A stretch of 64,000 nt of DNA from Guillardia theta CCMP2712 (GCF_000315625.1 NW_005434638.1:464121-528120), one strand, 5' to 3'. Counted from the first letter of the stretch, positions 28,002 to 58,090 are shown. Notes: generated by a model not told the origin, from the letters alone. A program made the numbers and translations.

Positions 28002-30522
28002 ATGTCATATCCACAACTTGGGCCTCAGACAGCCCGAGTGACGACGATGTTTATGATGATGATGATGATGATGATGATGAGTCTACCTGAAATAGCTGCT
28101 GTCAACGAAACCTGCAGCGATATGCCGCCAGCAGCTGTCACCTGTCCCGTCCTTCGGATGACCCCGTCTGCACTGTGGAATCAATATCAATACTTCAATT
28201 GGCAAGTAGGGAACAACTGGCCTGCCAACACTGCCTATCAAGACAACTATGATGTCCCTCCCTCCGATCGCCCTTGCATCAGCTACCCTGCGACATGCAA
28301 CGGGCCCAGTGACTACACGTGCACGAGGGGGATCAGGAGGCTGACTGACATGAACGTGAAGCGGAGAATGTACGAGGTGAAGCCAGGAAGTCCTGCAGTG
28401 TGCGGTCATGGGAACCGAGAGTTCTCATTCTTTGTTCGACCTGGGGACTCAGTACAAGACCTGATCATCCTGTTTGCAGCAGGCGGAATCTGTTGGGACG
28501 CAGCGAGTTGCAGCGGGGTGACGGGGTTGATGTCCATCGACTCGATGAACAGCCAGTACTACAAGGAGAAATTCGCATCGGTCCCTGTCGACATGAAACG
28601 AACTCTGAGAGACAATGACCCCGGGCTGAAGACAGGAATCGTAGATGCCTGGTCTATCGGCCTTGACTTCCTGCCATGGTCCCTGGTGGTCATCCCAGAT
28701 TGCACTGGTGACATGCACATCGGTAACCGAACAAGAGCCGTCAACCACGGAACGAGCTCCTGCTACACGGTCCACCACAAGGGTGCGGTGAACACCGGCC
28801 TTGCCCTCCAGTGGGTCCTCGACAACTTCAAGAACTTGAAGCGGCTCCTGCTGGTTGGCTCATACCAGGAGGCAAACTCCAAGGCATATGGCGCGCATGG
28901 TGTGATCTTCTGGGCCAAGTACCTTCAGGAGCAGATGCCGTCGACGGTCGTCCGGACTGTCGTTGACTCATCCATGGGAATCGCCGGGCCCTGGTTCAAG
29001 GCTTACATGGCGGACGATATATGGGGAACGGCGAACGCACTTGTTCCCACTGCTACTGGTGCTGGCGCCAAGGACAAGCTGCTGCCTCCGCCGTATGAGT
29101 GGGCGATCTGGAGTGATGACATCACGTCCTACTACCGCTGGGCCACGAGCCGCAGGCCGTCGCTCGCCTTTGCTGAGGTCTCTTCGATAGAAGACGACGT
29201 GCAGAAGAATTTCTTCATCATGACTGGTGGAATGTCACAAGATTGCTGCAACAATGGGTACACGTCGCTGAGCTGAATACTTGTTTGTTTTGATTTTACA
29301 CCCGCAGTTGTGGGTGCTCTAATCAAATCGTAAGGGATTCTAGGAACGGACAGCTGGATTGGACTAAGACGAGAAAGGTGGGAATTGAAACAGCTCGCGC
29401 GATCTTTGTGTGAAACGAGCTCAGGTGCAAATCTTGAGGAGGAACAAGTACATTCCAAACAACTATCGGTCCTGGATGATCAGCACTTCTACTACTCATG
29501 GACTTCTCGTTTCGCCGGAGTACATGTCAGTCTTTCCTGGACTCACGGTTGGGTCTGACTTGAACCGCAGGAGCATCTGCCCCAAGTTGGGTCTAGAGGA
29601 CTTCATGTGTCCACAGCAGTACATCCTGCAAACGTTGTTCTCCTGTCTGTCAATGTGCAACCTTGTACTGAACTTGTTTTTCTAAGGTGGACATATTCCT
29701 TCATCAATGCAAAGATCTCCTACAACCCTGAGGGGATCCCGATATCTTCGACTTTTCTGGGAACCACCTACAGCGAGAGAAATTTCGGCTACAGCACCTG
29801 CCTGGTGAGCCACATCGCCTTTAGCGTTCATGCTTCCTTGCTTGACCCCTGCCAGGGCTGTTTGGATGGCGTCTTGGGATCGGGGGAATACGACGAGCTG
29901 TGCAACGTAACGATCTACGACGATGACACGTTCAGGACAGGTACCTAGCTTCGACTACCTTTCCTCCTCTGACTTGTATCCTAGTTGCTGCCAGGTACAA
30001 CTCGAACTGGGTCTCGCTATGGGCGCTCAACGGAGGGTATTCAGACTGCCGTGGGGTGCGACTAGCTGAGACTTCTATCAGGGAAGCGCCGGACCAGCAG
30101 CTGTCGGGTCGACCCTTGAGGTTTGCGCATGAGTACAGAATGGAGCCAGGTTGGTCCCTTCCCCCCAGCTCGTCTCGACCTTCTTTCACTCGCAACGCAA
30201 CCGTTGCGATGGCGATTGACGGGTGGGGCAGGAGAAAATCTCGAGGACGTGGCGAAGCGTTTCGGGGTGACAGTGCAGGAGCTGGTCTACCACAACTACA
30301 ACCTGATGACTCACATCGACAACCCGCTCACCCTGGTATCCCTCGTCCCTCGCTCGCACCGGCGGCAGCTGACGAGTCTGTTGCAGCCGTCAGGAGATGT
30401 TGTATGTATAGTGTCAAGGGTGGCAGACGCTGTGGTAAGTTCTCTCTCCGCGCACTGACCCCGCGGGCTCAACGTTGTTGACGCAGGACGCGGGAGGAAG
30501 TCCGATCTGCATGCCGAGATGA
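28002..30522 (+). CDS. Secreted pectinacetylesterase/Notum-like domain + two C-terminal LysM domains (paralog A)
   Basis: FAAGGICWDAASC, WSLVVIPDCTGDMHIG, HHKGAVNT match the PAE family; DDTFRT|VAARYNSNWVSLWALN and GENLEDVAKRFGVTVQELVYHN...GDVVCIV are LysM-like. Confidence 0.8.
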
Positions 30523-30619
30523 AGCTCAGACGGACTTGTTGTTTGAGCTGGGTGATGAGAAGAAGAGCTTGCAAATGCTTTTGCCAGCCATCTTATGACA
30601 TGTAAAACTTATTGAAGAT

Positions 30620-33600
30620 CTTGTCCTATGACTAGTCAGCCGTCTCCTATCCGCTAGTCCTTCAGGACGTGAGCTCCGTAGCCACTCTCGGACCCGAAGA
30701 AATTCAACTCCACCTGCCGAATGCTTCAAAGGAGCAAGTGGGAGAGGGGAGGGCCTAGGAGAGAAGGGGGGGGGGCAGAGGCAAGGAGTTGGGAGGATAC
30801 CCTTCTGATCGCATTCGGGCCGAGGAAATCGACTGTCTGCTCTCGTCTCCTGCAAGCCAGCAAGTCACCAGTGACGTCATCAACGTTTCTCTCCCCGTCG
30901 ACTCACAGCAGGTCCGGGTGCATGGCGACTCTTCGCGGCATGTCTGAGGTTGTCACCACAGGGTAACGAGAGCTAGAGGAAGATTTCCCTGCCGCTGCCT
31001 CAGCCGTTGACCCACCACTTCCTTCCTCCTCTCCCTCGTTCTCCTCTGTTCCCTCTTCCTCCTTCCCCCTCCCCCCTCCACTCCTCCTCCTCCTCCCCCT
31101 CCCCCTCCCCCTCCTCTTCCTTCCTTCTCTCCCTCGTTCTCCTCTGCTCCCCTCTCCCTCCTTCCCCCTCCACTCCCCCTCCCCCTCCTCTTCCTTCCTC
31201 CTCTCCCTCGTTCTCCTCTGCTCCCCTCTCCCCCCTTCCCCCTCCCCCCTCCACTCCTCCTCTTCCTTCCTCCTCTCCCTCGTTCTCCTCTGCTCCATCT
31301 CCCTGCTTCCCCCTCCTCCTCATCTTTCCTCCTGCTCTCCTCTCCCTCGTTCTCCTCTGCTCCCTCCTCCTCTCCCTCACTCTTCAAAAGGACGTCTTGA
31401 AAATCTTCTTTCCCGGGCCGGGGGTAGAGCGACGGCTGATGGGGTGACGTCACCATGACGAGACTGCGGGGCAAGGAGTGGTGAACTCACCATCGTGTTG
31501 TTGAGGATCTTCTGGATCTTGTTGAAGTAACGATGGTCCTAAGCCAGCCATCAGCCTCCCCACCTCATCCGCTCCCTCTCCCGCTCCCTCCCCCTCCCCC
31601 TCCCCCTCTCCTTCTCCAACCTTGTCTTTCCCTGTGTTATACAGCTGGGCGATGTTGAGGGGGCTCATCCCATGGAAGTTTTGCGCCCCCGGGCTGACTC
31701 CGCACCTTCACCTCAGCGTAAGTAGCGATACTAGCATCTGTCGTCCTTCACTTCAAGATGAACTTCGCGGCCTCTCTCCTCCCGAACAGCACAGCGTAGT
31801 GGAGGGCCGTCCAGCCCTTCTTGTCCCTCCGTCTTGCGAAATGCCGCAGCTGGTAGAGCAGCGAGACGTTTCCCTCCTTGGCTGCGATCATGAAGTGGTG
31901 AAGGCGAAATCTTGGGCTCCCCTCGAATGTCCTCTGCAGCCTCATGAGGCGAGCAGGATAGACAGCGCTGGGAGGGGGGATGAAGTCTGAGATGTTGGAG
32001 AGGTTGGCGAGGTTCTCCAATTGTTCTGAGAAGATCGAATAGTTCTGGTCGTCCTCCCTTTGCTCTGGATCCTCCACCAGACGATGTTGAGAATCATTGG
32101 AGTACTTTTCAACACCTGTTCATTGCGTGAACAAGCACTTTCTCAGCCCCGAGGAAATTCCCTCCTCTCCACTTCTCACTCACATGCAGACAAGAAAGCG
32201 TTGGCTTGCTCACGCAGGACCTGTCGCTTTTCCTTCGGCTTCAGTTTGTCCCAGCCCTCAGGCAGCGGCTGTAAATCAAACAAGGACCTCAAGTCTGATT
32301 CAGCCTTCTTACATTCCTCAGTCTTCAATGATTCAGCCTTCTTGGATTCTTTAGTCTTCTTGGATTTGCGGGCTCGGACGAAGTGGAGCTCATCTCCAAC
32401 CTCGCTCTGCAGAGGGTTCACAAACAGCGCCTGAGATAAGCAGAACTCGAAATACCTGAAAGACCCAACGCCGCCCCTTGTGATCTGTGAAGGTTTGATT
32501 CTGTATCGCTACCTCCTGCTCCGTGGAAGTTCGGTTCTCTATCGCCTCCTGTTCCAACTCCTCCTCTTCGCTCAAATTCTGTTCTCGTGCCTTGCGTTGG
32601 TTGATTGCGCCAGGCAAGGGATAGAGCCTGAGCTTGACTTTCTTGCCATCTGGGGAGCACATTTGAGGTCAGAACAAGCACAGGAGCCAACACAATCAGC
32701 AGCAGGTGCACCTTGCAAGCCAAAGCTCTGCTTCTTGACTGGTAGCTTGACGTGGAATCCACTTTAAAACAAACAACAAGGTTCAGGTTTATGCACCGAC
32801 AAACATCTCAGAGGTTCACGTTCGCTTGCCCGCGTGAGTCTTCCTGTCCCACATGCTGTTTGACCCAGTCTCACAAGGTCGATCGTACAACAAACAAGCA
32901 AGGCTGGTTCCACCTCTGAATCTTCTGCCTCCTCAAACGAGTCTCCTCTCTCATGGCATCGAGGTCAGCCCTGGCGGAGGTCATACAACATGATCAGCTC
33001 AAGAGAAGCTCTCCAGAAGTCTCTCACTCACCATGCGTCTTGAATCTTTCCTTGTTCGGCAGCGCTCTTCTCTATCTCATCCCGTGAAGCCTTGTCTGTG
33101 GTAACTTCTCTTTCCCCCTCGTCTCCCTCATGAACCTGTTCATGAACCTGTTCATGAGCCTGTTCATGAACCTGTTCTATCTTGCTCTCAAAGAGTTCCA
33201 AGTCTGGTGCAGTGGTGTGATCGACAACTTGAGTAGTAGCTGGCTCGTATTCTGCAGCAGCTTTTCGACGCTTCTTTTTGTTCGCTTCATCAGCCTTTAC
33301 ATCAAAATCCTCCTGATCAGTCTGAGCAACTCCATCAGGCAGAGCTCTCTTAGCTGTAGAGACCTTCTGCTGCTCATCATCATCGTGCTTACTTGCATCC
33401 GCAGTTCTCTCCTCTCGCATCCTTCCCTCATCGCCTCCTGGCTTTGTACGCTGTTTCTTGGTCAACCTTGCTTTGGGCGCCTCAACATTTCTGTCCTCAG
33501 TGGCTTCAACCTTGACTGCTTCCCCGTCGGCCTGCTCTTCTCGCCCTTTCGACTGGTCGGCTGCCGAGCTCGCTCGGTTCGCAGATATTCTTGCAAACCT

Positions 33601-33825
33601 TGCGCTGCAGCCCTTGGAGGACCGGCGGTTTCCCATCTGATTGCTGATCTCCTTCCATTTCTTCCCCAGCTTCCCCTGCAGCTCCAGCAACTTCTGATCT
33701 TCCTCAGGCGTCCATGGCTCAGCTCGATCTGCTCCTCCTCTCAGGGCACACGAGGTGGAGGGAGGGAGGGAGGGAGCTGCGGCAATCCCCGACAGGAGTA
33801 GCAAAGCGAGGATTATGCTGGTCAT
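30620..33825 (-). CDS. Signal peptide + single Myb/SANT repeat + charged region + ankyrin repeats; multi-exon, 3' end approximate
   Basis: MTSIILALLLLSGIAAA leader; WTPEEDQKLLELQGKLGKKWKEISNQMGNRRSSKGCSARF; AAKEGNV...DKKGWTALHYAVLFGRREAAKFIL; GT donor near 33030 suggests one gene. Confidence 0.65.
31010..31380. repeat. Pyrimidine-rich higher-order repeat (CTCTCCCTCGTTCTCCTCTG core, ~5 copies) in intron
   Basis: Repeated core visible. Confidence 0.85.
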
Positions 33826-34136
33826 CCAAGAGCTCTGGCACAGGAGGCTTCTATTTTCATCCTCTTCCTCCTTCTTTGGCGCTGCTGTCTTTCTGTTCTG
33901 CAACCATGCTCATCTCCTCTCCTCTCCTCCTCCTCCTCCCAGTCATGCCCGTCGCCATCGACCGGCCGCATCGACAATCCGCCATGGCACAGGGAATGAG
34001 GGGGATGAACTGGGTTGAAAGAACCGTGAGTATGAGGGAGATGAACTATAAGAATGAGGGGGATGATTGGATTGTTAACAGGTACCCCTACTATTTTGGT
34101 CTCTTCCTGGGGTGGGGGTTGTACAACACGATCGGA

Positions 34137-34869
34137 ATGGCTGCGAAGGGTCGCGTGGTGGCATCGATGGTTGCGGCGATGGTGGTGGCCATGGCGTGTG
34201 TTCTCCTTCTCGTCCAGCATGGTAAGAGATCTTAGATTCCTTTGCTGGCCATTACCTCCATGTTTGCTCCTCCCCGCGACTGATGCCTTCATTCCTTGTT
34301 GATGTCCCGCTTGCAGATTCTGTCAGGGCGACTTCGCTCGATTCCGTGTACGTGGGAAACTGGAGAACGGATGAAAACTACCTTCCATGCGAAGAGGATC
34401 CATCCTGTGGATATGGTGCTAAGATTGCATGCCTGCCCTTGCTTCATGTAGCGCTGACACATGGGCAGGAAACATCAATCTCGACAGAGAGGCAGCGTAC
34501 AGCAACCCATCTCCTCTTGCTATCATCAACGATGACTACAAGGAAGGCCAGCTCAATCCCTACCCTGGCCCGAGGAACTTTGGTCCCGATTCTCCCGTAG
34601 CCTGGTTGCCTGAAGAGGTAGGATCGGCATGGGTAGACGAGAGTTAAATACACTGACGGGGTTGTCGTTGTTTGCAGGAAATGGACGACTACCCGGGGAT
34701 GGTTCGCAAGGTCTGGCCTGACTACACGGGCAGCGAGAACTCGATCTCAGCTACCAGTGCTGCCAAGAGCGTGGGAGTACAGCAGCTCTACATGTACTTG
34801 CGCATTCCTGCAGCAGTTTCAAACTAACTTTGATACAGGAGGAGGAGACCGACTCTCTTTGTTAAGTAG
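34137..34869 (+). CDS. Small orphan type II membrane/secreted protein; multi-exon
   Basis: TM VVASMVAAMVVAMACVLLLV followed by short exons joined by GT-AG introns (DSVRATSLDSVYVGNW...GNINLDRE...EMDDYPGM). Confidence 0.55.
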
Positions 34870-35061
34870 GAGACGAAAAGTTTTTAACCTTTCGGGACTT
34901 GGGGGTGTCAATTGTATCTTATAAACTTTGTTGTTTCTGCGACGGTCTTGTGCTTGTCTGTTCGACTTGCTTCATTGATGAGAACTTGTAAAATCTGGGA
35001 GATCGAATATCTACAGAGGACGGTCTCACGTAATGTACAGGAGCAGTGGGAGAAGATCCGA

Positions 35062-36719
35062 TTAAGCAATGCCCTTCGCCATGTTCTTGAAGCCAACCCC
35101 CACACAAGAGAGCACAAGAGATTTGGTAGCGTCGTCTGCCTTGATCCTGATGTTGCTCGTTAGCTCTGCCATGTCGATCGTGGCCGAATCTCACCGGTAA
35201 ACCACACCGAAGACATCGCGAATCATCCTCAGCAGTTTGATCTTCCGGGCCAGCGACGTCAGCCAGTACACCATCACCTCAGACTCTCACCGTGTTGGGC
35301 GAGAGCCGACCCAGTCGAACTCTCGAGACATCCTCTGGACAACACACCGCAAGCAACAGCACGATCCCCTATGGCAAAGAGCCCTCAGCTCATCTCTTTC
35401 TTACTGGGGACCTGCTGGCTCACCTGGTTGGAAGTGTCCACGAAGCCTCCTTGTGAAACTTCTTGTAGCAGCCGCTTAGCTGCTATGAGCCCGACGTCCT
35501 CGGGAATCTTCAACACCATCAGTTCCTGCTAATCTGCACTCGAAGGTTCTTCCTACCTGTCCTCCCTCTGCACACGCTTCTGCCCCGTACAGGCAGCCGT
35601 TCGTCGTCTCAGCGACGAGGCTTACACCATAGCTGAGAAATAGTTGAGCACATGGACTTGAGAAGCACGCGTCCGCAAGCTTACCCCGAGCTGTTCCCGG
35701 CGTTGTTGCCTTTGAAATGATCGGTGTAGACATACACGTCGGGCAAGACCTGTTATCTTTGCAAGTCAACCACTCTATCTTGCGCCCAATTTGCTCAAGT
35801 TGCCTTGTTCAAGATGCTCTTGGCTGAGTCGACGACACGATTGGGGACTTGAGGAGAAACCTTGTGGCATGGTCATGCTGACGTCAGCTCAAGCTATTTC
35901 AGTCACCTTAGAGGCGTACGCCACCCCGCGAACTCTCCTGACGTGTCCGATGTTGACCAGGTTTACGGGCTTCAGAGTCTACAGACCGGAAGTGCGTCAA
36001 AGAAAAGTTTACAGCAGCTTCCATCGGCTCACCTTCACGACGGGGCATCTGAACAGAACTTCTCCGCCGCCGTTGGGTCGCGCTCCTCGCTTGAGAACTC
36101 TCAGCTCAAGCCCTTCGGAGATTCCGAAGTGCTTCAGCAGCGGCATGGTGACAGTTCTCAGCGTGTCAACGCACAGGCTTGTCTCCTCGTTGGTGATGCC
36201 TGGGCCATCAGTGTCTCAGTGATCTGACGAGCTACTAGAGGTTGCGAGTCACTCCAGCAGTCACCTGTAAGAGTGATAGCGACTGGGTTCTTGGCGAACG
36301 GAGCTATACACAGCAAGGCTTCGAGGAACCATCCAATACCTGCACCAGGAGTTACCTTGTCTTCACGTACTGGATCAAAGTGCTTAACCTCTAGTCTTCC
36401 CGCAGTCATGTTCTAGTCCAGTCCCTCCGACCAGTACTCCTGGCTTGTATCGCATCTTTGTTCCCGTGTCGTTGATCTCAATCATACAGCCGTTGGACAG
36501 CTTCTCTATCATCCGAAGGAACGAAGCCTCGAAATCCCGGAGGCCAGGGGACTCAGTGTTAGCACGGATGTCCGAGATCCGAATGGCCTTCAATGCAGTC
36601 AGTTCGCCATCACCTTGCCCAGATGCTATCGAACCAACCTTTCCTGTCAGTGTGGATGCAATGATCCTGTAGCGGAAGATAGAACATCCTTTGAAGTTCA
36701 GGCTCTGATTCTTCGACAT
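35062..36719 (-). CDS. RCL1: RNA 3'-terminal phosphate cyclase-like protein (18S rRNA processing)
   Basis: FKGCSIFRYRIIASTLTGK|AIRISDIR...PGLRDFEASFLRMIEKLSNG...IEINDTGT...HDCGKTR|GIGWFLEAL; ends GFKNMAKGIA*. Confidence 0.93.
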
Positions 36720-36896
36720 CGTCTGCAAGAAGATATCAACACAAACATCACCCGATGATTGAAATCTCGATGTCCTTCTTCCTAGTGTGATTCTTTTCCC
36801 TTCAAGTCTCCCTCTCTCTTACGGTGAACCGACTTTTCAACTTGTGCTCCCTTGCGATCATCATCATCAGATGTGCGACCCCCCCTCTCTCTGTGC

Positions 36897-36985
36897 ATCA
36901 TCTTGTCTTGTAATCTTTACATCTTCATCTTGTCTTGTAATCTTTACATCTTCTTCTTGTCTTGTAATCTTTACATCTTCTTCTC
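36897..36985. repeat. 27-bp tandem repeat x3 (TCTTGTCTTGTAATCTTTACATCTTCA) in the RCL1/NFACT divergent promoter
   Basis: Visible directly. Confidence 0.9.
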
Positions 36986-37196
36986 TCTCTTCCTTCCCTT
37001 GTTTCCTCGTCTCATCCTCGCCTTCCCTCCTCTCCTTCTCCCTCCACCGCACGTGCCAAATCGCCATTGACTTGTGGCCCTCATCCCCGCACATCCGGGC
37101 CTCACCTTTGCTCCGGTGCCCCAGCCGGTACCCGGCGTGACTGAGATCGCCCCCGGGCCTTGATCGCCGGGTCAGGCCCTGACTCACAAGGGCGAC

Positions 37197-39001
<1,805 letters not shown>

Positions 39002-39095
39002 TGGGATTAACGAGCTTCAAGTGAACTTACAAGAACTTTCTTGTCCTCCCATAGTCGTTGTAGAACTTTCGGATCGGTTCCGACCGGCAGCCATC

Positions 39096-41932
39096 TCATC
39101 TCTCCCTCGGCCCCCAGATCTTCATCTTCGAGTCAGCAGATGCTGTCACAATCAGCGGCTTCTCATGGTGGAAACTTGCACAGTAGACCTGCGCTCCCGT
39201 TAGCTTCAACCTTCTCGCTCTCATCCCCTCCTCCCCCCCCCCAAACCCTCCCCCCTCCTTTTTCGTCCTCTCCCTCCTCCCTCCTCCCAATCTTCCAACT
39301 CCCTCTCACCCTGTCCGCATGACCCTCCAGCTTCTGAAAGAACTCGCCGAAGGAAGGGTTGCTGATGTCGTACACGTAACAGTACTTGTCGACGCTGCCG
39401 TCATTGTCAGCTCCTCCTACCCTTATGTCTCGATCATCGTCACCTCCCAGTCGCCACAAGGAGCGACTTGTCCAGGGTCGTGGAGCGAGAAGTGGAGGAT
39501 GCAAGTTGTTGGGTTGAAGCTGAAGAAGGGACAGTTACGTCAGGGGTGCACAACAGTACGAGGAGGATGAGGAGGAAGGAGAGAGGACAAGGAGGATGGA
39601 GGAGGGGAAAGTTTTGGGATGGACTAGAATCCTTAAATGGGGGAAAGAGGAAAGTACCGAAATCCTGTGAAAGTGCAAAAAATCAGCCGTCAAGCATTGA
39701 GAAGCAGTAGGGAAGGAACACGAGAAAAGCAAACACGCAGTGTGTATGTAGCGTCAAGAGCAAGGACAACAAAAGGAGAAGAGGAGAGAACGGAAGGAGA
39801 GCAGCAAAGAGACAAAGTTAGAAATGGAGCTCAGCCGAGAGCGAAAGGAGCTGTTACTGCAAATGCTCACGTTGGCGTAGTTGTAGAGTTTGCCCCTGAA
39901 GAAAGAACTCCTGATGGGGAAATTCTTGTTTTTGTGCCCCTACCACACAACTCGTCAATCCCACCCAACCCGTCCATTCATCCTCCTCCCATACTCCTCT
40001 ACTGTGATGCTCACCTGCAGCGAGTGGATCATTCGGAGAGACTCCCGGCTGCCCGGCATCTGGTCCCTTTCATGGCTTCCAACATTTGCTCGTGAGAACA
40101 CCTGAATTCAATCAGAGAAAAGCCAGGAAAATGCATCCATCATCATATGAAGAAACAATGAAGTGGGATGCGTCAATGAATGCAAAGTAGGTTGTTCCTT
40201 ACCCGTAAGATGTTGTCGTAGCTGTTCGCTGCTAATAGTGAAATCTAACGACAACAGAAGTCATGCAATGCTCGTACAAGAAGCATGATTTTCTCACCTC
40301 TTGCGATTGAGATAGTGTTGCAAAGTGTAAATCACTGATTGGTTTGTTGGACTCGATGTGGAATGCCACAGAATCGCAAGCTGATTCGTTCATCATGCGC
40401 AAATCCCATGCTTTGATGCATCCCTTAGAATCTCCAGAGAACAGCTTGTTGCACTGAAGCAAACCATCACACACACCCGGCAATGAGAGAGAAGCAAGAA
40501 ATTACATCTGGCGTAAAGCACAGACCATTCATCATCCCGTCGTTCTGCAGGACACTGGCAAACGTGGAAGATCGCTTATCGATCAAGCATGCCTGCAGCG
40601 AACACCTCGATCAAACCAACATGGCTCTTGAGAGAAAGGAGATCATCACTTGATTCTGAGAAGTTCCGGCCCAAATCTGGTTGCAGTCTAGAGGGTGGCA
40701 GACGCAGCAGAGGACAAATCCACAGAGCTCATACGAGGAGACTGACTTGCAAGCCTGAAGTCGGAGGACGTCAAAACAGCCCATGACTTCATCACTCGAT
40801 AGAGCAAACAACCTGCAAGTCCCAATACTTGACGGATCTGTCGTACGCACCTACCCTTGCACATCAGCACCAACAGAGAGGGGCTGGAGTTCTTGTTTCA
40901 CCGGAGACCAAGAACAAATCGTCACTTGTCCATGAGACATCGCTTACATTCAGGTTGTGCTCCTGGCAGCGTACACAATCAGATGTCTTCACGCAAAGTT
41001 TGATGAGACACCTGTAAGATAGACTTCTCCTCCCCCTGTTTCGTCATCACCAGCATCATCAGCTCTACCCTAGGGGCCAAGGTTCTGCAAGGTTTACCTG
41101 AAGTCGACCAGCCGAATCGCTCTGGACCGTCCAGATTCTACAAGTAGAGTCAGATTCGGGAGAGAACGCAAAAGGAGGGAATGTGCACAAGTGGAGGAAG
41201 CTATGACAAGAGGAAGGAGTGAATCTTCAGGGAGGCAAGGAAGGTGGGGTATGGAGCGGACGGGGTAATGGAGGGCAGCAAACAAGGGAAGACATGGGAA
41301 TGAAAGGGATGAATGAGGGAAGAGTCCGAGGTAGGGCAGAGAAGGGGAGGGGAGGGAGGGATCTGACCTGACGCTTTTGTCTAGAGACCCCGAGGCAATA
41401 TACTGCCCCTGCATGAAAATTGAGATCTAGCATGGTTCAGGAGGACGAGGGCGAATCACCTTATGGCAGAATCGCGCTACGTACACGGCACCAGCATGAC
41501 CCTGTGGAGGAAGTCACGAGGGAAGAGAGGAGATGTCAAGAGAGAAGAGGACCTCAAGGTCACACTTGCAAGAGAAGCTCTTCCCCTCCTCCTTCCTCTG
41601 CACAGGTTTGTTGTGAACCTCCTCCTGAAGTTGGTCTTGAATTCCTTCTGAAGTATCAATCCCATCGGAAATTGTCAAGGAATCCTGAAAAGACGGGCAA
41701 CGCCTTACTCACTGAGTACAAGGCGAGCAGACAGTGCTACCTGAGAGCCGACCATGTGGTTACTGGATCTTTGCTTGATGCTCAGCTCGAAGTATGCTCG
41801 CTTCAGCTCTTTGTACTCTCTTTCCATTTTCTCCAGTTTCGACCGAAGCGTTTTGTTCTCCATTTCCACGAGATCAATCGATCTTTGTGCGGAATGGACT
41901 TCACGAGTCAGTGAGGCTGCTGAGGTGCTCAT
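39096..41932 (-). CDS. N-terminal coiled-coil + WD40 repeat protein; multi-exon
   Basis: GQYIASGSLDKSV, LFSGDSKGCIKAWD, KLEGHADR|VYCASFH...IVTASADSKMKIWG; N-terminal heptads ENKTLRSKLEKMEREYKELK. Confidence 0.85.
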
Positions 41933-42299
41933 CTTAGCCTGCTTTCACGGTGCTTCTCAAAACTTATGCTCCGCAGCCAGCATTTCCAGCGCCCACGAAT
42001 CAGTTTTTGAGCAGGATTCTCATGATCTAGGTAGAGCAGGCAAATGCTGTGATTATTTTCTTCTTGTATGAGAGATCATATCACATGACGATGAGGATTC
42101 AGACACTGAAGGCGACGAGGACTACTGCTCCAACGCCACTTCATGCTCCAACAAGCCTCGTGAGCTTCGCCAGCCAAGGACAACTCAAATCCGAGACAGG
42201 AGGGGAGGCAACTACGGAGACAGGGAGAGAAGAAGGGGGAGCAGGATCAACTGACTGGCCTTTCTCTCACTTGCTCCTCCTCCTTCTCCGTCCTTCCAT

Positions 42300-44091: not shown

Positions 44092-46461
44092 GATGGTAGA
44101 AGTCAGGTTGATGATTGCGCGTTCCTTGGGTTGAGATCAGGAACACGGTGCCAGTATGAATGTTCAAAGGAGAGAATCACAAGTGGGACGAATTTGAACT
44201 CCATGGAGAGCGGCAGAAAATTGATGTGAAGGATCGATCGAGCACTAGGGTGGTGGGACCGGATTGACTGATGGTATACTGATGACTGAACCACTCTCAT
44301 GCAAAAAATTCTAGAGGTTCCAAAACATGCACTAGGAAGCGGTTGCAAGTTTTGTAGCCATTCATACCCAGAGTCAGCTTGTATAACTGTTCCTGTTCTG
44401 AATGGCATATACATCCTCCCAAAGCATGCTGGACTTGAAATGTTCCTTCAATTTGTGATAAGTGGCAGCAGGCAGGACTGATTGAAACTGAATAACGCCA
44501 GCCACGCATCGAGTACAATGCACCCGAAGGTAATTCTTCCGTCTGTTTCTTCAGTATTTCCCTGACCGCTTCCTCCAAGACTGATAACACCGCATCCCCG
44601 ATCACCTCCCCCTTTCCTGCGTCTTTGCCAACAAACCCAGCCGGTATTCTGTCGCCATTAACTGCCGCAAGACATGCGGGCAGCACTGCAGCGATGGAGA
44701 TTATGGGAAAGCTCAATCAGCAGGCAAGCAGGCAAGGATTGAAGTTTTCATCCTAGCAAAGTTCTGACAGGCAACGGATCAGCTTCTTTCTAGCGGATGT
44801 ACACAGAGATTCTTATCCCATCACTTTCGTGTCGGAGAATTTTTGCAAACTTACAGGTATGTTGCTGAACAGCCAGAGTTCGTCATATTCTTGACCATGA
44901 GCTTATCTTAGGGTACTCTATGGATGAATGCCTTGGAAAGGAATATTTCTTTTTCAAGGGACCTCAAACAGACAAGGACGCCGTCGAAGACCTGCAGAAG
45001 GCAAGTGTTTTTCCAACGTAAGACTGTCTCACTGGAGAGCAAACAGTCTGTCGAAGACGGAGTAGAGTATGGCTGCAAGCTGATTTGCCACAAACGGGAT
45101 GGGTAACACCGCTCGTACCTATTTATTGCTCTTGAAACATGTTTACAGGAGCACTTTCTGGACCAATCTCAACGTATGCCCTGGTTTGTGTGGATTGCTT
45201 GAACCGACCCGATGCGTCCCTCACAAGTATTTTAGTCAAGGATAAGCAAGGAAATCTGCAGATGATTGTAGGGAATTTGGAGGAGTTGGATGACAAGGGA
45301 AATACCTTGGTACGAGAGCAGGTTAAAGCCTTGGAAACTCAGTCCGTTGAAATTTTTGTTGCTACAGGATTTTCCCTCAGTAGACCATTTCGATTCGACA
45401 GAAGATTTTGCGCATCAGCTGTCCCATAAGATGATGATGCATGTACGTACAACGTACATGCCATGGTTGTGCAAAGGTGGTAACTGTGGCTATCAGGAGA
45501 AGAAGCCAGCTTTTATCAATGAAGCATACACGACTCGTTTGACAGATTTGCAGCGAAATGAGGCAAGTTGAAATCTTCTCAAGGGGCATCATAGAAATGT
45601 CTAACGCACGGGTATGGCAACACCAGGTTGTCTGCGTGGCAGACGCTCGACTTCCTGACTGTCCGATTGTCTTTGCCAACCAAAGATTCTTTGATTTGAC
45701 TCAGGTAGGTGGTTTTGCTTCTTGTTTGAATCTACTCCCAACCTCACTCGATTGACAAACCCGGCAGTACACCCGCGAAGAAATTCTTGGCCGTAACTGC
45801 AGATTCCTGCAAGGGCCCGACACAGACAGAGATGATGTGACTGAGATTCGCGAAGCGATCAAAGCTGGTCGTCCTGTGTCTTCATGCATTCTAAATTACA
45901 AGTGAGGGCGGCCTGTTGTTTGTAGGTCTTGTAATTTTGTTCTTTCTTGCTAACAGGAAAGACGGAACCCTGTTTTGGAATCACTTGCACATTGAACCAG
46001 TATGCTCTGCTTTCTCGCACCAGCTAGACTCTAAAAGTCCTTGAAGGTGCATGACAACAACGGGAGCATCACTTTCTTCGTCGCCTCACAGGTTGATGCT
46101 CATCAGTGCGGGACAGTTGCTGGGGGCTGACTCTGGTCTTGCAGCATGACGTCACGCACCTTATGGACGAGGCGATAGAGCACATCTGCGAAGGCAACTC
46201 TCTCACTCTCTCCAGCTTGTCGCTGGTCTGACGGTCGATGAGCAGGCAAGCCGATAGATCTTGACAAGTACAACGAGGGCAAGAGGATAGAAGAGGCTCA
46301 AGATGATGCCCTTCAGAGCGTTATCTTCTCGCTCCCAACAGCAGACCAGGTGAGAATCTCTTGGGTTGTGTCGTGGTCTAAGTCTGTTTCTCCTTCCTTC
46401 TCCTCTTGCTCCCTTACAGTTTGGCGATCGACATCTGCTCAAGCAAGGTTTTCATCACTAG
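44092..46461 (+). CDS. Dual PAS/LOV protein (degenerate LOV1 + canonical LOV2), no kinase or bZIP seen; start uncertain
   Basis: LOV1: SFFLAD...[14 protein letters not shown]|[21 protein letters not shown]; LOV2: [22 protein letters not shown]|[20 protein letters not shown]...LNYK|KDGTLFWN...FFVASQ|HDVT. Confidence 0.88.
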
Positions 46462-46519
46462 CAACGCCTATAGCCTATCAACACTTTGTTCTACTCACAA
46501 TCTCTCCTTCTCAAACTCC

Positions 46520-52936
<6,417 letters not shown>

Positions 52937-53207
52937 TGCGACCACCCCTACCCCTCCCTTAGCCTTCTTCAGTCCTAGACCCCTCCTGTAGAAATTTTCT
53001 CTCCCCGACACGCCCCGACACTGCATGGGATGGAACGGCAGCGAGGGAGCGATGGAGAGAGGATGAAGGAGAGGGAAGGGAAATGAGTGCATCACCATGA
53101 CGTGCTGGCGGTAAAAGACACACCAGCATGCTGATGGCAGCGAAAGAACGCTGATCGCCAGGATCCTTCGCTTTCTGCTCCTCCTCTTCTCCTCTTTGAG
53201 ACTTGCC

Positions 53208-55064
53208 ATGGTCGTCGGTGCCGAGGTGAGGGTTGTTGTTGTTGTCTACACTCAGCTCATTGCACGTGCAGGAAGCATGCCTGCTGACAGCAGCAGAAGC
53301 TCGTGAGTGGCGATACAGGGGGGAGGGCTCCATGAACTTAGTGATGGCCTACATTGGCGGTGAACTCTTCGGGTTTGTATGAGCGACAACTGATAACTTA
53401 GGTTCATGCAGACAAGGAGGGTCTTCAAGGAAAGGTCTTACGACTCCGCAAAGCTCCAATAGACAGCGACGAGAGCTTCAAGTGCGCATCAATAGAGGAA
53501 AGCTACGCATTTCTACAGCGGCAACAGTTCTCCAAGCTTGATGGCTCCTGCCTTCCACGAGGACTCCTCGTCTTAGTGTCTCGAGACTTTCTCGCCAGCG
53601 TCAAGTCCTCCTGTCACGGTCTGCGACCTGCGCACCGGCTGACCAGAGACTTGGACTTGACCGCGAGGTCTGGATGGCTGCTGCCGGATCTAGTATCCGT
53701 GCCTAAGGAGCTCTTGGTGGGAAGCAAGGTCTTTCTCGGCATTGAGATCAAACCAAAGTGCGGGACCCTGCCCGATCGCAAGCTGTTGAGTTCAGCTACA
53801 GCCATCAAGGCACAAGTCAGCAGATACCGCATGATGCAATACGAGAAGCTGAGGACCGGGAAGATAACATCTATCAGCTCCTACGACCCCCTCGACCTCT
53901 TCTCAGGAGATTTGCTGCGAATGCAGACAGCGGTAGAAGTATTGATAACTTCAGGGACACGTTTAGACTCACTCCTAGCTCTCAGGTGCGCAACATGATG
54001 CAGGACCCGCAAAACGTGTTCAGAGTTTGGGTCTGTAGCGGCCCCAGCAGCGCGATCAGGTTGGGATGGACGGGTTTGTCATCTGTGCATGAAAGAACTT
54101 GTCTGCAGACATCTTGGGAGCGAAGAAGAGCTCCGCGAAGTGCTGGGCAGGTTCGTTGCCTTCACTGACTGACAATCATTCAAATGTTCCTTTAGCCCTG
54201 GCCTCTCTCGCAGTTGGGAGTCCGAAGAGGACTTTTGCAGGTATTGTTGCTCGTGAGCATTAGCCTTAAATGCTCTGATTCCCCAGGCTGTAGGCTGTTC
54301 GCCAAAGTCGTTCAGCACTCGAAAGTGCTTGTTCGAATCAGGTGCCCTGTCCGAGTTTGCAAGTTTTGTGCTTCATTCCATTCTTTTATCCTTGCCCATT
54401 GAGTTGGCCGATTGAGTTTTCCCCTTCCTTGCAGGGAGCTACAAGCTCTGGACGCCCTTGACATCGAAAACATCTATCACATGCACAGATGCCTGGCCAA
54501 CCCTGACGAGTATTCAGAGGCTGATGCACGGTCGTCGGCACCTGCTAAGCTCCCTCCTGTACGTTTGCTGTGCGCTCTTCGCTGATCGCTGTAACATGCT
54601 CTTGTCTCAAGGTTGGAGACTGGGACAGGCTCATCGAAGAGTACTTGATTGCACATGTGAGATGCTGATTGGCTCCATCGTAGAGCACTGAACGGTTGGT
54701 TCTTGCTTCTCGACAGAGCGCTAAGGATTGTTCGGTCATCTTCACGCTGACCATGATTGACAAGCAAGAACACGATTCATCCTCAATCATGTCATCAGCC
54801 AAAAGTCATGGATTCGAGCTTGTTGATGAAAGTGAAAGCTGCGCTGTGTTGTACAGGTTTGGCGTGGTAACGTGTTTCCGGATGGAAGCGTTTGTGTCGC
54901 GATTGACACAGGCCCAGATTGACCTTGATATCAAGCTTCGCACCAAAATCCCCGAATACATGTAAGACCATCTCCTCAATGATCCCGTGACCCCGTGCTT
55001 GCCAAGGTCACAAGATTCACGGATCCTGGAGGGGTACCTGGAGCACAACGCAGATAAATGTTGA
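53208..55064 (+). CDS. IPK1: Inositol-pentakisphosphate 2-kinase; multi-exon
   Basis: WRYRGEGSMNLV, GKVLRLRK, IEIKPKCG, SRYRMMQ, YDPLDLFSGD, PQNVFRV, SAKDCSV, IDLDIK = full IPK1 motif series. Confidence 0.92.
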
Positions 55065-55679
55065 ATCAATCCGCAATAAATGTTGAATCAATCCGCCATG
55101 AGCTCGAATAACATCAACTCTTGTCTTCCAACTTAGCATGAAGATCTCTTCTCCCTATCATCCATGCTCCATGCTCCCTCCCGCTCTCCTTCCGCTTCCA
55201 GTCCCACTTGACCAGTGTTTGTCGGGGACTGTGATCGGATACGGGTACTTTGCCCTGGAAAGAAGGGGGTACCAGCACCCCTCGTATCAATGTCCTCTAG
55301 TGGGTGGGGGTGACACAAAATGGTACAAAAAGCTGGGTAGTTACTCGATCAATGAGGGGGTGGGGTAATCAATGAAGGACCCCTGGAACACCAGACACTT
55401 GGCTTTTGGGAGACACCGACATGCTGGTACTTGGAGGGAATGCAGAGGACATGGGAGGAACCGGGGGGGGGGAGGAGGAGGAGAGTGGAAATGATGGAGA
55501 GTTCATGATAGAGTGGAGAGGATGGAGACGAGTGGAGGAAGGATTGGAGGCAGATGGAGGAGTGCAAGACGGAGTGATGGAGGGGAGAGAGGAGAAGAAA
55601 CAGGGAGCGGGTATGTTCTGACCAAGATGTGTTACAGGCTGTGAGGAACTGGTATTGAGCTCCGTACACTCATTCCAAG

Positions 55680-58090
55680 ATGGTTGCTATGCCTGCAGCG
55701 AAGCTGTCGTTGTTGACATGTGAGAACTTGTGAGACTCACCTTGAGTTGAGTTTGACATTCCTTCTAGTCTACTCCTGCCTGCCTGCGCTTCTATACGCG
55801 CAAACTGCTTCTGTTCCTGGTTGTGGATTATCACGTACTCCTCAGCCATGCCCGATCTTGACCAGTAAGGGATACATGCATCAAAACCCCGATGGCTCGC
55901 CGAACGACCAAGTTTTTGAACCGCCGTTGAGTCAGCAAGACGTTGCATGTGAGTGATCAGGGCTGCAGTGCATTCTTGCATGCTGAGAGATGTCTGTTTC
56001 TGAGAGATGTCTGCTTCTGAGAGATGTCTGCTTCTCAGAGATGTCTGTTTCTGAGAGATGTCTGTTTCTGAGAGATGTCTGTTTCTGAGAGATGTCTGTT
56101 TCTGAGAGATGTCTGCAGGTACAAGTAAGGCAGCAACATGCGTGAACAATGTCTGTAACTATGCGAACGGCATGACCGGATTGGGACCGTAAATTTCTTC
56201 ACTGATGATTGGTTCTCCTTTGACACGACATTGTAGATCTAACGTTTGGTATGAATTGAAGCCCGGAAGTCCTGCTGTGTGCGGACACGGCAACCGAGAG
56301 TTCTCATTCTTTGCCAAGAAGGGAACCAACGCAAACAAGGTTGCCGCCTTCCTCCCTTGATACCTACAGTCTGATGGATGTCTAGGTCTTGTTGGTTCTG
56401 TTGGCCGGTGGAATGTGTTGGGACTCAGCTACGTGCCTTGGGAGCACACCCTCTGACCGCAAGATGGCTGTAGACTCGCTGTCTGACAGCTACCAAGTCG
56501 TCGTTGGGGGCGTTCCCCAGACCATCGACGAACTTGCCCCCGCTGTTCCCAAGGCCTTGAAGAATGTTTGGTCGCCATCTGGAAAGTCGACGTTTGAGAC
56601 AGGAATACTGCAGTCAGATTCGCAGTTCGCGGATTGGTCAGTTGTAGTCGTGCCGGATTGTACGGGAGACATGCACATTGGTAACAGGAGCATCACGTAC
56701 GATGCTGGGGCGCCCTCTTGTATTACCGCTCATCATGTCGGAGCAGTCAACACTGGTCTGGCAGTCCAATGGATGATGAAGTACTTTCCTTCCTTGACTG
56801 ACGTGCTCGTGGTTGGAACTGGGCTGAAAAACTCCAAGGCAACGGGTGGATCTGGAGCTTCGTTCTGGGCATGGTATGTGCAAGAGAGGTATCCTAGTGC
56901 GAAAATTCGATCCGTCACAGATTCAGATTTGGCAATTTACGGGCCCGACAAGAAGCATATTTTTCAGAACGATCCATGGGGTACCTTGAATGCGTCGGTG
57001 CCAGATAAGAGTTTCCTTGGCAGCTACACCGCTCCCACCTTGCCCGGCAAGAAACCAAACTTCCTCACCCAAGGTTTCCTCCTTCCTGCAAAGAACGAGT
57101 GGTTCTTTGCAGACGATGATAAGACCTACTACATGAGGTACATCACGCACTACTATCCGTCCATAATCTTCGCCGACATTTCGTTTCTCAATGATCAAAC
57201 CCAGGAGATGATTTTCGTGCAAACTGGTGGAAAATTACACGACTGTTGCTATGACGGTTGCAGTTGTAACGCACAGCAGGAGATTAGAGGTGGCAGGTAT
57301 GATTGGTTGAAATCTCAAAAGGTCACGATCTTGAGAAGAAACAATTTGCTTCCAAATAATTACAGAATTTGGCTTTCTGACCAGAACCCTCATCATTTCT
57401 TGTTCTTCTGGAGTGATTTTGTTACCCATCAACTCATTGTCAATGATATGATGACGAATTTTTATCAAAATTCAACAGCGAACACATGGCTTTTCAATCT
57501 TGTGAACTCCATGGTGAGTTTCACTACACAGGCTGGTGACAGCACCAGCATCATCATCTCAAACAATCTCAAGCCGTCGAACACCTCCATCTGCTTGACA
57601 TGTTTGTCTGGAGTTCTTGGCTCTAAACAAGGAGAGGAAAAATGTCTAATGTCGTGGGGATCTGGAGAGAGCTCCATATCTGTCGCACCGAAGTTCAAGA
57701 CCGACTGGCTTGCTTTGTGGTCCCTCAACGGAGGAGACAGCCCAGATCTGATCATGAGCCAATCGACATATCGTTTCGGGCACGAGTATGTCATCTTGGT
57801 GAGCAACTTTCCTTCCTCGCTCCTCCTGCTTGCTGATTCTTTCCTTCCAGCCAGGAGAAACTCTCGCTCAGATTGCTTCTCGGTTTGGAACGACAGATGC
57901 TGAGCTAGCAGACCTCAACTACAACTTGATCACCCACATCAGCAATCCTTTCCACGTCATGGCTGGAGATGTCGTCTGCATAGTTCCTCATTTTACAGCT
58001 GCTCTTGATAGGATGGGAAATCCTCTTTGCCCGAGCAACTTGCAAACCCTCGGAGCTCAACTCCCTTCCTCGGTGGCTCAGCCTGTGTAG
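55680..58090 (+). CDS. Secreted pectinacetylesterase/Notum-like domain + two LysM domains (paralog B)
   Basis: Leader MVAMPAAKLSLLT|FYSCLPALLYA; WYELKPGSPAVCGHGNREFSFF (near-identical to paralog A); GGMCWD, PDCTGDMHIG; GESSISVAPKFKTDWLALWSLN and GETLAQIASRFGTTDAELADLN...GDVVCIV. Confidence 0.82.
55983..56118. repeat. 17-bp minisatellite x~8 (CTGAGAGATGTCTG[T/C]TT) forming the 3' part of an intron
   Basis: Visible; last unit ends in ...GTCTGCAG acceptor. Confidence 0.92.

What the first reader, a model, noticed from the sequence alone, without database searches (positions are those of the whole stretch)
28002..58090. Two paralogous secreted pectinacetylesterase-like + tandem LysM proteins, both apparently lacking the catalytic serine
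Seen: genes at 28002-30522 and 55680-58090 share signal peptide, Cys-rich N-terminus, PAE-like domain and two LysM. Known: PAE/Notum hydrolases carry the nucleophile in GxSAG; LysM binds GlcNAc polymers (chitin, peptidoglycan). At the equivalent site A reads LVGSYQEANSKAYGAHG (28857-28902) and B reads VVGTGLKNSKATGGSG (56815-56856): a loop insertion and Ala where Ser is expected, in two otherwise well-diverged copies. Inference: a conserved pseudo-esterase/LysM family acting as an extracellular sensor or lectin for bacterial or chitin glycans (prey recognition or defence), or an enzyme using the shifted Ser of NSKA. I do not recognise this architecture from described proteins.
Basis: partly seen in the sequence, partly recalled or inferred. 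Interest (0 to 1): 0.8.

Follow-up and report, generated by a model that had tools for sequence, protein, structure and literature searches.

The report
Serine-less PAE/Notum-fold proteins with tandem LysM
Two old paralogous genes of the alga Guillardia theta encode secreted proteins whose esterase-like domain has alanine in place of the catalytic serine and carries two sugar-binding LysM domains, making them members of an undescribed cryptophyte family that probably binds glycans rather than cleaving them.

Summary
The window is Guillardia theta. Gene A (28002-30522) is GUITHDRAFT_139190. Gene B (55680-58090) matches an MMETSP transcript. They are about 40% identical and sit in different old clades of one monophyletic family of about 20-30 clusters, from cryptophytes and aquatic metagenomes.

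The central domain is a true but divergent PAE/Notum fold:
- hhalign against bona fide bacterial PAE proteins gives probability 100%, E 7.5e-49.
- AF2 models match Notum at Z 23-27, against about Z 12 for other alpha/beta hydrolases.

In a 57-sequence alignment the outgroup's invariant nucleophile Ser aligns with Ala in 23 of 26 family members, including A255 in gene A and A283 in gene B. A 6-7 residue insertion turns the tight elbow into a 10-11 residue loop. The triad Asp and the D-x-x-Q glutamine are kept. The triad His is kept in A, B and four relatives, and is Arg or an aromatic residue elsewhere.

Tandem LysM is confirmed. The fusion stands in single transcripts and in single ORFs.

Best reading: a secreted pseudo-esterase/LysM glycan binder. 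Activity through another residue (Ser287 in B) or a new centre is not excluded. No paper was found. The function is inferred, not shown.

The parts
28002..30522 (+). Gene A (GUITHDRAFT_139190). Exons by the NCBI model: 28122-29258, 29309-29380, 29428-29529, 29575-29634, 29688-29804, 29856-29939, 29984-30151, 30234-30335, 30387-30434, 30487-30519, then the stop. The true start is probably the ATG at 28002 or 28047.
   Evidence: The family alignment shows conserved N-terminal Cys upstream of the NCBI start.
28047..28103 (+). Putative signal peptide of A, with a poly-Met hydrophobic region encoded by an (ATG)9 repeat.
   Evidence: This is an inference; relatives have classical signal peptides at this place.
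28359..29870 (+). PAE/Notum-fold domain of A (P0001 residues about 80-501, introns included).
   Evidence: VIA-align to Notum: Z 23.3, 304 residues aligned, model range 81-498. hhalign to true PAE proteins: probability 100%.
28857..28907 (+). Remodelled nucleophile elbow of A. It comprises the end of strand beta5, a 7-residue insertion, and S253-K254-A255 in place of G-C-S. A255 (28884-28886) stands at the Ser position. H259 (28896-28898) is at the helix N-cap.
29193..29204 (+). Retained acid motif D358-x-x-Q361 of A, equivalent to the PAE/Notum D-x-x-Q.
   Evidence: the motif definition comes from PMC5465549.
29497..29499 (+). H427 of A, aligned with the invariant triad His of bona fide PAE proteins.
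29898..30124 (+). LysM1 of A. It holds a probable unannotated in-frame intron at 30037-30081.
30125..30413 (+). LysM2 of A (introns included).
   Evidence: Pfam LysM, 33.7 bits against a 20.9 cut-off.
55680..58090 (+). Gene B. Exons: 55680-55718, 55771-55950, 56121-56189, 56238-56342, 56389-57798, and 57851-58090 including the stop. The protein is about 681 aa.
   Evidence: The orthologue in Hanusia phi is 78% identical.
55680..55790 (+). Signal peptide of B, with a hydrophobic region of about 16 residues ending L-Y-A before Q-T.
   Evidence: This rests on reading the sequence; no predictor was run.
56241..57603 (+). PAE/Notum-fold domain of B (P0012 residues about 99-537).
   Evidence: AF2 pLDDT 78.9, pTM 0.85. 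Notum Z 26.6 and 25.2, against about 12 for the next alpha/beta hydrolases.
56815..56856 (+). Remodelled elbow of B. A283 (56839-56841) stands at the Ser position. S281 belongs to S-K-A. S287 (56851-56853) of G-G-S-G-A is at the helix N-cap.
57193..57204 (+). D401-x-x-Q404 of B.
57391..57396 (+). H467-H468 of B. H468 aligns with the triad His.
57649..57798 (+). LysM1 of B.
57851..57982 (+). LysM2 of B.
   Evidence: Pfam LysM, 33.5 bits against a 20.9 cut-off.

Best explanation
Genes A and B belong to a cryptophyte-restricted family of secreted, disulfide-rich proteins.

Anatomy: signal peptide, a short Cys-rich head, a domain of the PAE/Notum (CE13-type) alpha/beta-hydrolase fold, and a C-terminal tandem LysM.

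The domain descends from bacterial-type 'pectin acetylesterase-family hydrolases', which have an intact Ser-Asp-His triad. In this family the canonical catalytic machinery has been dismantled:
- The nucleophile Ser is Ala.
- The tight strand-Ser-helix elbow is opened by a 6-7 residue insertion into a 10-11 residue loop.
- In most members the triad His is Arg or an aromatic residue. The two G. theta copies keep it.

The pocket scaffold is kept: the oxyanion G-G-x-C-W motif, the C-T-G-D loop, the H-x-G-x-x-N motif, and the Asp and Gln of D-x-x-Q. New invariant polar residues appear in loops next to it. They include C-G-H-G-N-R-E-F-S, Asp for Tyr in P-D-C-T-G-D, a second His in H-H, D-P-W-G, D-D, and a C-C-x-x-G-C-x-C insert.

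Most likely mechanism (inferred): the LysM pair holds the protein on a GlcNAc-containing polymer, which could be bacterial peptidoglycan, chitin, or a component of the alga's own surface. The dead esterase cleft binds, without cleaving, a sugar or acyl/acetyl-bearing ligand. The protein would then act as a lectin-like recognition or scaffold protein at the cell surface.

Shown: the anatomy, the homology, the loss of Ser, and the conservation. Inferred: secretion, the ligand, and the lack of activity.
For: Identity and family
- G. theta, Hanusia phi, MMETSP cryptophytes and metagenomes.
- the exhaustive search finds 19 representatives at E<=1e-30, then a gap down to ordinary PAE proteins (1941 hits at E<=0.001).
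- the family is monophyletic (support 100), and A and B lie in different old clades.
- a metagenomic orthologue sits among eukaryotic genes, and that contig's L15 protein is closest to the cryptophyte Baffinella frigidus among named hits.

Homology and fold
- hhalign of the family against 30 proteins that are bona fide Pfam PAE (five sampled at E 1e-19 to 1e-27) gives probability 100%, E 7.5e-49.
- Notum matches at Z 23.3 (A) and 26.6 (B) over about 300 residues.

Loss of the catalytic serine
- In the 57-sequence alignment the outgroup Ser (31/31) aligns with Ala 23, Ser 1, Val 1, Gly 1 in the family.
- The register is fixed by the invariant Gly at +2 and +5 and by the F/Y-W that follows.
- The AF2 models place a 10-11 residue loop between beta5 and the helix. 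pLDDT is 87-96 there in B.

Other triad positions
- The His column reads H 6, R 8, Y 5, F 2, N 1, T 1, K 1.
- Asp is kept in 23/26 and Gln in 26/26.

Conservation
- B is 78% identical to its Hanusia orthologue.
- About 50 positions are family-specific and at least 90% conserved, mostly in loops.

LysM.

Ligand class
- Bacterial relatives occur fused to Acyl_transf_3 and to YdjC, which fits a group that handles acetylated glycans.
- Unchecked scan notes report LysM on many other extracellular G. theta proteins.
Against: - No biochemical data exist.
- Both G. theta copies keep Asp and His, which a fully dead site need not do.
- Gene B and its Hanusia orthologue have Ser at the helix N-cap (G-G-S-G-A).
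- The many new invariant His/Asp/Glu/Asn/Arg residues fit a rebuilt catalytic or metal site as well as a binding site.
- The most conserved motif (C-G-H-G-N-R-E) is modelled with low confidence in A (pLDDT about 38).
- Gene A is almost silent in the one RNA run with raw reads (4 reads).
- The signal peptide of A is atypical.
Confidence: 0.55

Rival explanations
1. The family is still enzymatic. Either a shifted residue serves as nucleophile or base at the old site (Ser of S-K-A two positions upstream, or the His/Ser at the helix N-cap). Or the family-specific invariant residues form a new centre, for instance a metal-dependent or acid/base deacetylase acting on the GlcNAc polymers that LysM binds. 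Those residues include His, Asn, Arg and Glu of C-G-H-G-N-R-E, Asp of P-D-C, the H-H pair, D-P-W-G and D-D.
For: - About 50 family-specific positions are at least 90% conserved, many of them polar and in loops that follow strands.
- Asp, Gln and the oxyanion motif are retained.
- His is retained in A, B and four relatives.
- Relatives in bacteria are fused to glycan-acetyl-handling domains.
Against: - No candidate nucleophile is conserved family-wide. The Ser of S-K-A is T/N/G/A/E in one clade. The helix N-cap residue varies among H, S, E, V and N.
- The triad His is replaced in 18 of 24 aligned members.
- The elbow geometry is lost in both models.
- No known metal-binding motif was matched in Pfam.
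Confidence: 0.25
2. The two copies differ. Gene B, with its Hanusia orthologue, is an active serine esterase using S287-D401-H468. Gene A (H259 at that place) is the dead partner. This would be an enzyme/pseudoenzyme pair.
For: - Only the B clade has Ser in a G-G-S-G-A context together with Asp and His.
- AF2 puts S287 directly before the helix, which is where nucleophiles sit in alpha/beta hydrolases.
Against: - The sequence register, fixed by two invariant Gly and the Trp, places S287 at nucleophile +4, not at the nucleophile.
- The sister clade (P0005, P0006, P0024) has His there, so Ser in B would be a secondary gain.
- An 11-residue loop precedes it instead of a strand.
Confidence: 0.12
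3. The missing serine is an artefact of wrong gene models, or the genes are decaying pseudogenes.
For: - The NCBI model of A has a wrong start and probably a retained intron.
- The transcript of B retains an intron.
- Expression of A is very low.
Against: - The elbow lies inside long uninterrupted exons in both genes.
- The same Ala and insertion recur in about 25 independent sequences from transcriptomes and metagenomes.
- The reading frames are intact, and orthologues are 78% identical.
Confidence: 0.03

Closest known systems
Bacterial 'pectin acetylesterase-family hydrolases' (Pfam PF03283; e.g. WP_141732235.1 of Oligoflexus tunisiensis, P0032)
   Same: These are the closest sequence relatives (E about 1e-33 to the family profile; hhalign probability 100%). 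They share the P-G-x-x-x-C...F-S-F-F start, G-G-x-C-W, C-T-G-D-x-H, H-R-G-x-x-N, G-x-x-G-x-x-Y/F-W, D-x-x-Q and the C-terminal Cys pair.
   Different: They keep G-x-S-x-G, Asp and His invariantly. They are about 350-400 aa, without LysM, without the elbow insertion, without the C-C-x-x-G-C-x-C insert and without the Cys-rich head.
Notum (Wnt deacylase; PDB 4uz7, 4uzk) and plant CE13 pectin acetylesterases
   Same: Notum is the best structural match (Z 23-27, about 300 residues aligned). These are secreted and disulfide-bonded. The motif series matches: oxyanion G-G-(G/W)-x-C, Y-C-S-S-D type loop, D-x-x-Q. PMC5465549 gives GCSxG, NxayDxxQ and HCQ as the triad motifs.
   Different: Sequence identity is only 12-15%. 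Ser is replaced by Ala. The HCQ His is not conserved in the family. No LysM is present in Notum or in plant PAE.
Catalytically inactive alpha/beta-hydrolase-fold binding proteins (neuroligins, GID1 gibberellin receptor)
   Same: A hydrolase fold that has lost a triad residue yet keeps a conserved pocket used for binding. GID1 (3ebl) appears among the general alpha/beta-hydrolase matches at Z 10.7. That neuroligins and GID1 are such cases is from my own knowledge.
   Different: They belong to different subfamilies (cholinesterase-like, hormone-sensitive-lipase-like) and have different ligands and domain partners. Lack of activity is not shown for the family described here.
Tandem-LysM glycan binders (Ecp6 4b8v; T. 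thermophilus NlpC/P60 LysM pair 4uz2; LytE 8i2e)
   Same: The C-terminal pair aligns over both LysM units (E 8e-6 to 6e-4).
   Different: Those are effectors or peptidoglycan hydrolases with other catalytic domains. None carries a PAE/Notum fold.

Membership tests
PAE / Notum family (Pfam PF03283, CAZy CE13 type) | Notum-type alpha/beta-hydrolase fold | tested here: met
   Z 23.3 for A and 26.6 for B against Notum, with the next folds at about Z 12.
PAE / Notum family (Pfam PF03283, CAZy CE13 type) | Score above Pfam's gathering cut-off (26.6 bits) | tested here: not met
   A scores 24.9 and 23.3 bits, and B has no hit. One relative passes (P0025, 36.6 bits). Profile-profile homology is nevertheless certain.
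PAE / Notum family (Pfam PF03283, CAZy CE13 type) | Nucleophile Ser in G-C-S-x-G | tested here: not met
   Ala in A (A255), in B (A283) and in 23 of 26 family members, against Ser in 31/31 outgroup proteins.
PAE / Notum family (Pfam PF03283, CAZy CE13 type) | Triad Asp in D-x-x-Q | tested here: met
   D358/Q361 in A and D401/Q404 in B. Asp in 23/26 and Gln in 26/26.
PAE / Notum family (Pfam PF03283, CAZy CE13 type) | Triad His (H-C-Q / G-x-x-H-C) | tested here: inconclusive
   H427 (A) and H468 (B) align with it, but only 6 of 24 aligned family members have His there. The spatial position was not measurable.
PAE / Notum family (Pfam PF03283, CAZy CE13 type) | Esterase activity | not testable with these tools
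   This needs an enzyme assay.
LysM domain (PF01476) | Pfam score above the cut-off (20.9 bits); beta-alpha-alpha-beta unit | tested here: met
   LysM2 scores 33.7 bits in A and 33.5 bits in B. LysM1 is seen only by profile alignment to the tandem LysM of 4uz2 (E 8e-6) and by secondary structure in the models.
LysM domain (PF01476) | Binding of GlcNAc-containing glycans | not testable with these tools
   This needs pull-down, ITC or a glycan array.
Pseudoenzyme (inactive homologue of an enzyme family) | Loss of an essential catalytic residue, with conservation of the protein under selection | tested here: met
   Ser to Ala family-wide. Orthologues are 78% identical, and the family has diversified into at least 5 clades.
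Pseudoenzyme (inactive homologue of an enzyme family) | Demonstrated lack of catalysis | not testable with these tools
Alternative residues are not excluded.

The most novel reading that the evidence does not exclude
The family is not a dead esterase but a re-engineered one. The PAE/Notum scaffold has lost the Ser-His-Asp chemistry and has acquired a new active centre, built from the family-invariant His/Asn/Arg/Glu/Asp residues around the old pocket and possibly metal-assisted. Tethered by tandem LysM, it would modify GlcNAc polymers such as peptidoglycan or chitin, for example by de-acetylation. That would be a new catalytic solution on an alpha/beta-hydrolase fold, used by cryptophytes in dealing with bacteria.
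Probability: 0.15. Interest if true: 0.75.

Novelty: new variant of a known kind. Interest (0 to 1): 0.45.

Why it matters
- Cryptophytes are ecologically important algae, and their extracellular biology is almost unknown.
- This is a conserved, multi-paralogue, lineage-restricted family. It joins a glycan anchor (tandem LysM) to a Notum/PAE-fold domain whose catalytic serine has been removed.
- If it binds bacterial or chitin glycans, it would be a candidate recognition molecule for alga-bacterium contact, whether prey capture, defence or phycosphere interactions.
- It would also be, as far as my searches show, the first pseudo-enzyme branch reported for the PAE/Notum fold.
- It corrects two gene models.
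- It gives a clean test case for how alpha/beta hydrolases turn into binding proteins.

Tried and rejected
- Sequence search of PDB with gene A alone found nothing. With family profiles it found only the LysM pair and a 40-residue oxyanion-motif match to Drosophila Notum at E 0.2. Residue equivalence to Notum could therefore not be taken from sequence.
- hhalign places the elbow gap arbitrarily, aligning the Ser with E250 in A. I rejected that placement in favour of the register fixed by two invariant Gly and the Trp, which MAFFT on 57 sequences reproduces.
- The AF2 outputs give only secondary structure and confidence. No coordinates were available, so distances between candidate triad residues could not be measured.
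- RNA evidence for gene A was uninformative. There were 4 reads in the sampled 6% of one RNA-seq run. The 'RNA?' contigs cover only the neighbouring minus-strand transcript at 30576-30714. Neither the start codon nor the proposed 45-nt intron could be verified.
- Six literature searches found no paper on this architecture or locus tag.
- The ESM Atlas feature search returned only generic PAE clusters at scores of about 0.82, which are not significant.
- A giant-virus or bacterial origin of the intronless metagenomic copies was considered and rejected. Their neighbours are eukaryotic genes: COPI-associated, CLPTM1 in pieces, PP2C.

Full report
**What is there**

The window is nuclear DNA of the cryptophyte Guillardia theta CCMP2712. 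The long ORF of gene A is 100% identical to NCBI protein GUITHDRAFT_139190 (P0001, 641 aa, named only 'hypothetical' or 'LysM domain-containing').

- P0001 maps to ten exons between 28122 and 30519, with GT..AG introns of 44-82 nt.
- Gene B is covered by an MMETSP transcript (P0012, 636 aa) mapping to 55680-57900. That transcript reads through the last intron. The DNA shows a GT at 57799 and an AG at 57849-57850. The exon that follows (57851-58090) encodes the second LysM, exactly as in the Hanusia phi orthologue P0018.
- A and B are about 40% identical over the large domain.
- tblastn with five family members finds only these two copies in the window.

**Gene-model corrections**

- Relatives have conserved Cys and a signal peptide upstream of the NCBI start of A. 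The start is therefore the ATG at 28002 or 28047. The second is followed by an (ATG)9 repeat encoding a poly-Met hydrophobic stretch.
- Inside LysM1 of A, positions 30037-30081 begin with GTATTC and end with AG, and are 45 nt long and in frame. Removing them turns an A-specific 15-residue insert into L-N-G-G-E-A-P-D, which is the family consensus. This is probably an unannotated intron.
- RNA reads could not confirm either point. Gene A had 4 reads in the sampled part of the one raw RNA-seq run.

**The family**

- The word-based search found 21 clusters.
- The exhaustive profile search of 1.84 billion representatives found 19 at E<=1e-30. After that there is a sharp gap, followed by 1941 ordinary PAE proteins at E<=0.001.
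- Named members are G. theta, Hanusia phi and MMETSP cryptophytes. The rest come from aquatic metagenomes and metatranscriptomes and are called 'hypothetical'.
- One metagenomic orthologue is a single 698-aa ORF on a 62-kb contig among eukaryotic genes (COPI-associated, CLPTM1 split by introns, PP2C). The best named hit of that contig's L15 protein is the cryptophyte Baffinella frigidus.
- A maximum-likelihood tree, rooted with ten bacterial-type PAE proteins, gives a monophyletic family (support 100). A and B lie in different old clades. B is 78% identical to its Hanusia orthologue, and Hanusia has at least two paralogues.
- These are therefore conserved, functional genes, not decaying copies.
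- The esterase-LysM fusion is real. It stands in single transcripts and in single ORFs.

**The esterase-like domain**

- Pfam PAE (PF03283) scores just under its cut-off for A (24.9 against 26.6 bits) and gives nothing for B. 11 of 21 relatives hit weakly.
- The next-best proteins of the big search are bona fide PAE, with Pfam E 1e-19 to 1e-27 for the five sampled. One is 'pectin acetylesterase-family hydrolase' of Oligoflexus tunisiensis.
- Thirty of them have invariant G-x-S-x-G, D-x-x-Q and His.
- hhalign of the family against these thirty gives probability 100%, E 7.5e-49 over 279 columns.
- The AF2 model of A has pLDDT 67.8 and pTM 0.75. Its best PDB match is Notum (Foldseek E 3e-7; VIA Z 23.3, 304 residues aligned).
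- The AF2 model of B, built with a deeper alignment, has pLDDT 78.9 and pTM 0.85. An unfiltered search of 48,161 chains gives Notum at Z 26.6 and 25.2. All other alpha/beta hydrolases score Z 12.4 or less.
- The fold and the homology are settled.

**The catalytic positions**

PMC5465549 gives the PAE/Notum triad motifs as GCSxG, NxayDxxQ and HCQ. The table gives the columns of the 57-sequence alignment (26 family members, 31 outgroup proteins).

| Outgroup residue (31/31) | Family members | Gene A | Gene B |
|---|---|---|---|
| Ser (nucleophile) | Ala 23, Ser 1, Val 1, Gly 1 | A255 | A283 |
| Asp | Asp 23, Glu 2, His 1 | D358 | D401 |
| Gln | Gln 26 | Q361 | Q404 |
| His | His 6, Arg 8, Tyr 5, Phe 2, Asn 1, Thr 1, Lys 1, gap 2 | H427 | H468 |

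- The register at the elbow is fixed by the invariant Gly at +2 and +5 and by the following F/Y-W. These are conserved in both groups.
- Relative to the outgroup, the family has 6-7 extra residues between strand beta5 and this motif.
- In both models the strand ends where the outgroup's would (A 241-248; B residues 270-276). A 10-11 residue loop follows, and the helix starts four residues late, at H259 in A and G288 in B. Confidence in B is good here, with pLDDT 87-96.
- The canonical tight nucleophile elbow is thus gone.

**Caveats**

- The residue just before the helix is His in 22 of 29 sequences. It is Ser in gene B and its Hanusia orthologue (G-G-S-G-A), Glu in two, Val in one and Asn in one.
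- B also keeps Asp and His, so a Ser287-Asp401-His468 arrangement cannot be excluded without coordinates, which the tools did not give me.
- The Ser of S-K-A (nucleophile -2) is present in A and B but is T/N/G/A/E in one clade. It is therefore not a family-wide nucleophile.
- None of the candidate positions is a conserved Ser.

**What replaced the triad**

- About 50 positions are at least 90% conserved in the family but not in the outgroup, and most lie in loops. They include:
  - G-H-(G)-N-R-E-F-S after the first Cys;
  - Asp instead of the outgroup's Tyr (94%) in P-D-C-T-G-D;
  - a second His before the shared H-x-G-x-x-N;
  - D-P-(W)-G;
  - D-D;
  - an inserted C-C-x-x-G-C-x-C;
  - D-(W)-x-K;
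  - further Cys.
- From the standard alpha/beta-hydrolase topology (my own knowledge), the beta1-beta2 loop and the loops after beta3 to beta5 lie on the active-site face. These residues therefore probably line or roof the old pocket. I did not measure this.
- Such a pattern fits a conserved ligand-binding site. It would also fit a rebuilt catalytic site.

**LysM**

- LysM2 passes Pfam's threshold in both genes.
- The family profile aligns across both LysM units with the tandem LysM of a Thermus NlpC/P60 protein (4uz2, E 8e-6), LytE and Ecp6.
- Both models show two beta-alpha-alpha-beta units.

**Context for the ligand**

- Bacterial members of the nearest PAE group occur fused to Acyl_transf_3 (the membrane acyltransferase family), to YdjC, and to MMPL/sterol-sensing domains. 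This fits a group that handles acetyl or acyl groups on glycans or lipids.
- Unchecked notes of this scan report LysM on many unrelated extracellular G. theta proteins. That suggests LysM is a general surface tether in this alga. I did not test this.

**Verdict**

- The best-supported reading is a secreted, LysM-tethered pseudo-esterase of the PAE/Notum fold acting as a glycan- or acyl-ligand binder (confidence 0.55).
- Rivals:
  - a re-wired enzyme (0.25);
  - B active and A dead (0.12);
  - an artefact (0.03).
- No paper on the architecture or the locus was found.
- It is a new variant of known kinds (pseudo-alpha/beta-hydrolases and LysM fusion proteins), restricted to cryptophytes as far as sampled. 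Interest is moderate.

Noticed in passing
window 28053-28080: A perfect (ATG)9 microsatellite lies inside the 5' coding region of gene A. It encodes a poly-Met run that would serve as the hydrophobic core of the signal peptide. The reads tool skipped this stretch as a repeat.
   Followed up: partly
window 30037-30081: This is probably an unannotated in-frame 45-nt GT..AG intron in LysM1 of GUITHDRAFT_139190. Removing it restores the family consensus L-N-G-G-x-x-P-D.
   Followed up: partly
window 55983-56115: A 17-nt tandem repeat (7.8 copies, 96% matches) fills most of intron 2 of gene B. On the minus strand it mimics a repetitive ORF.
   Followed up: partly
window 30576-30714 and 31011-31375: Transcript contigs of three runs end at 30576 with a T-run, which is a poly(A) tail of a minus-strand RNA, and leave the genome at 30714, probably a splice site. 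This is a convergent neighbour whose 3' end lies about 55 nt from the stop of gene A. Further on lies a CT-rich low-complexity array that reads as Glu/Gly/Arg-rich ORFs on the minus strand.
   Followed up: no
L001:10001-12097 (ENA ERZ10646630 contig_23106): A family member (698 aa) is intronless on a gene-dense eukaryotic contig, while the G. theta copies have 5-10 introns. The contig's L15 protein is closest to Baffinella frigidus among named hits.
   Followed up: partly
proteins P0075, P0111 (Acyl_transf_3+PAE), P0033 (PAE+C39-like peptidase+YdjC), P0052/P0056 (MMPL/sterol-sensing+PAE): Relatives with intact PAE domains, of unknown source organism (the library carries no names), occur in unusual fusions. 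These include a membrane acyltransferase fused to a PAE domain, reminiscent of OatA-type O-acetyltransferases but with a different extracytoplasmic domain.
   Followed up: no
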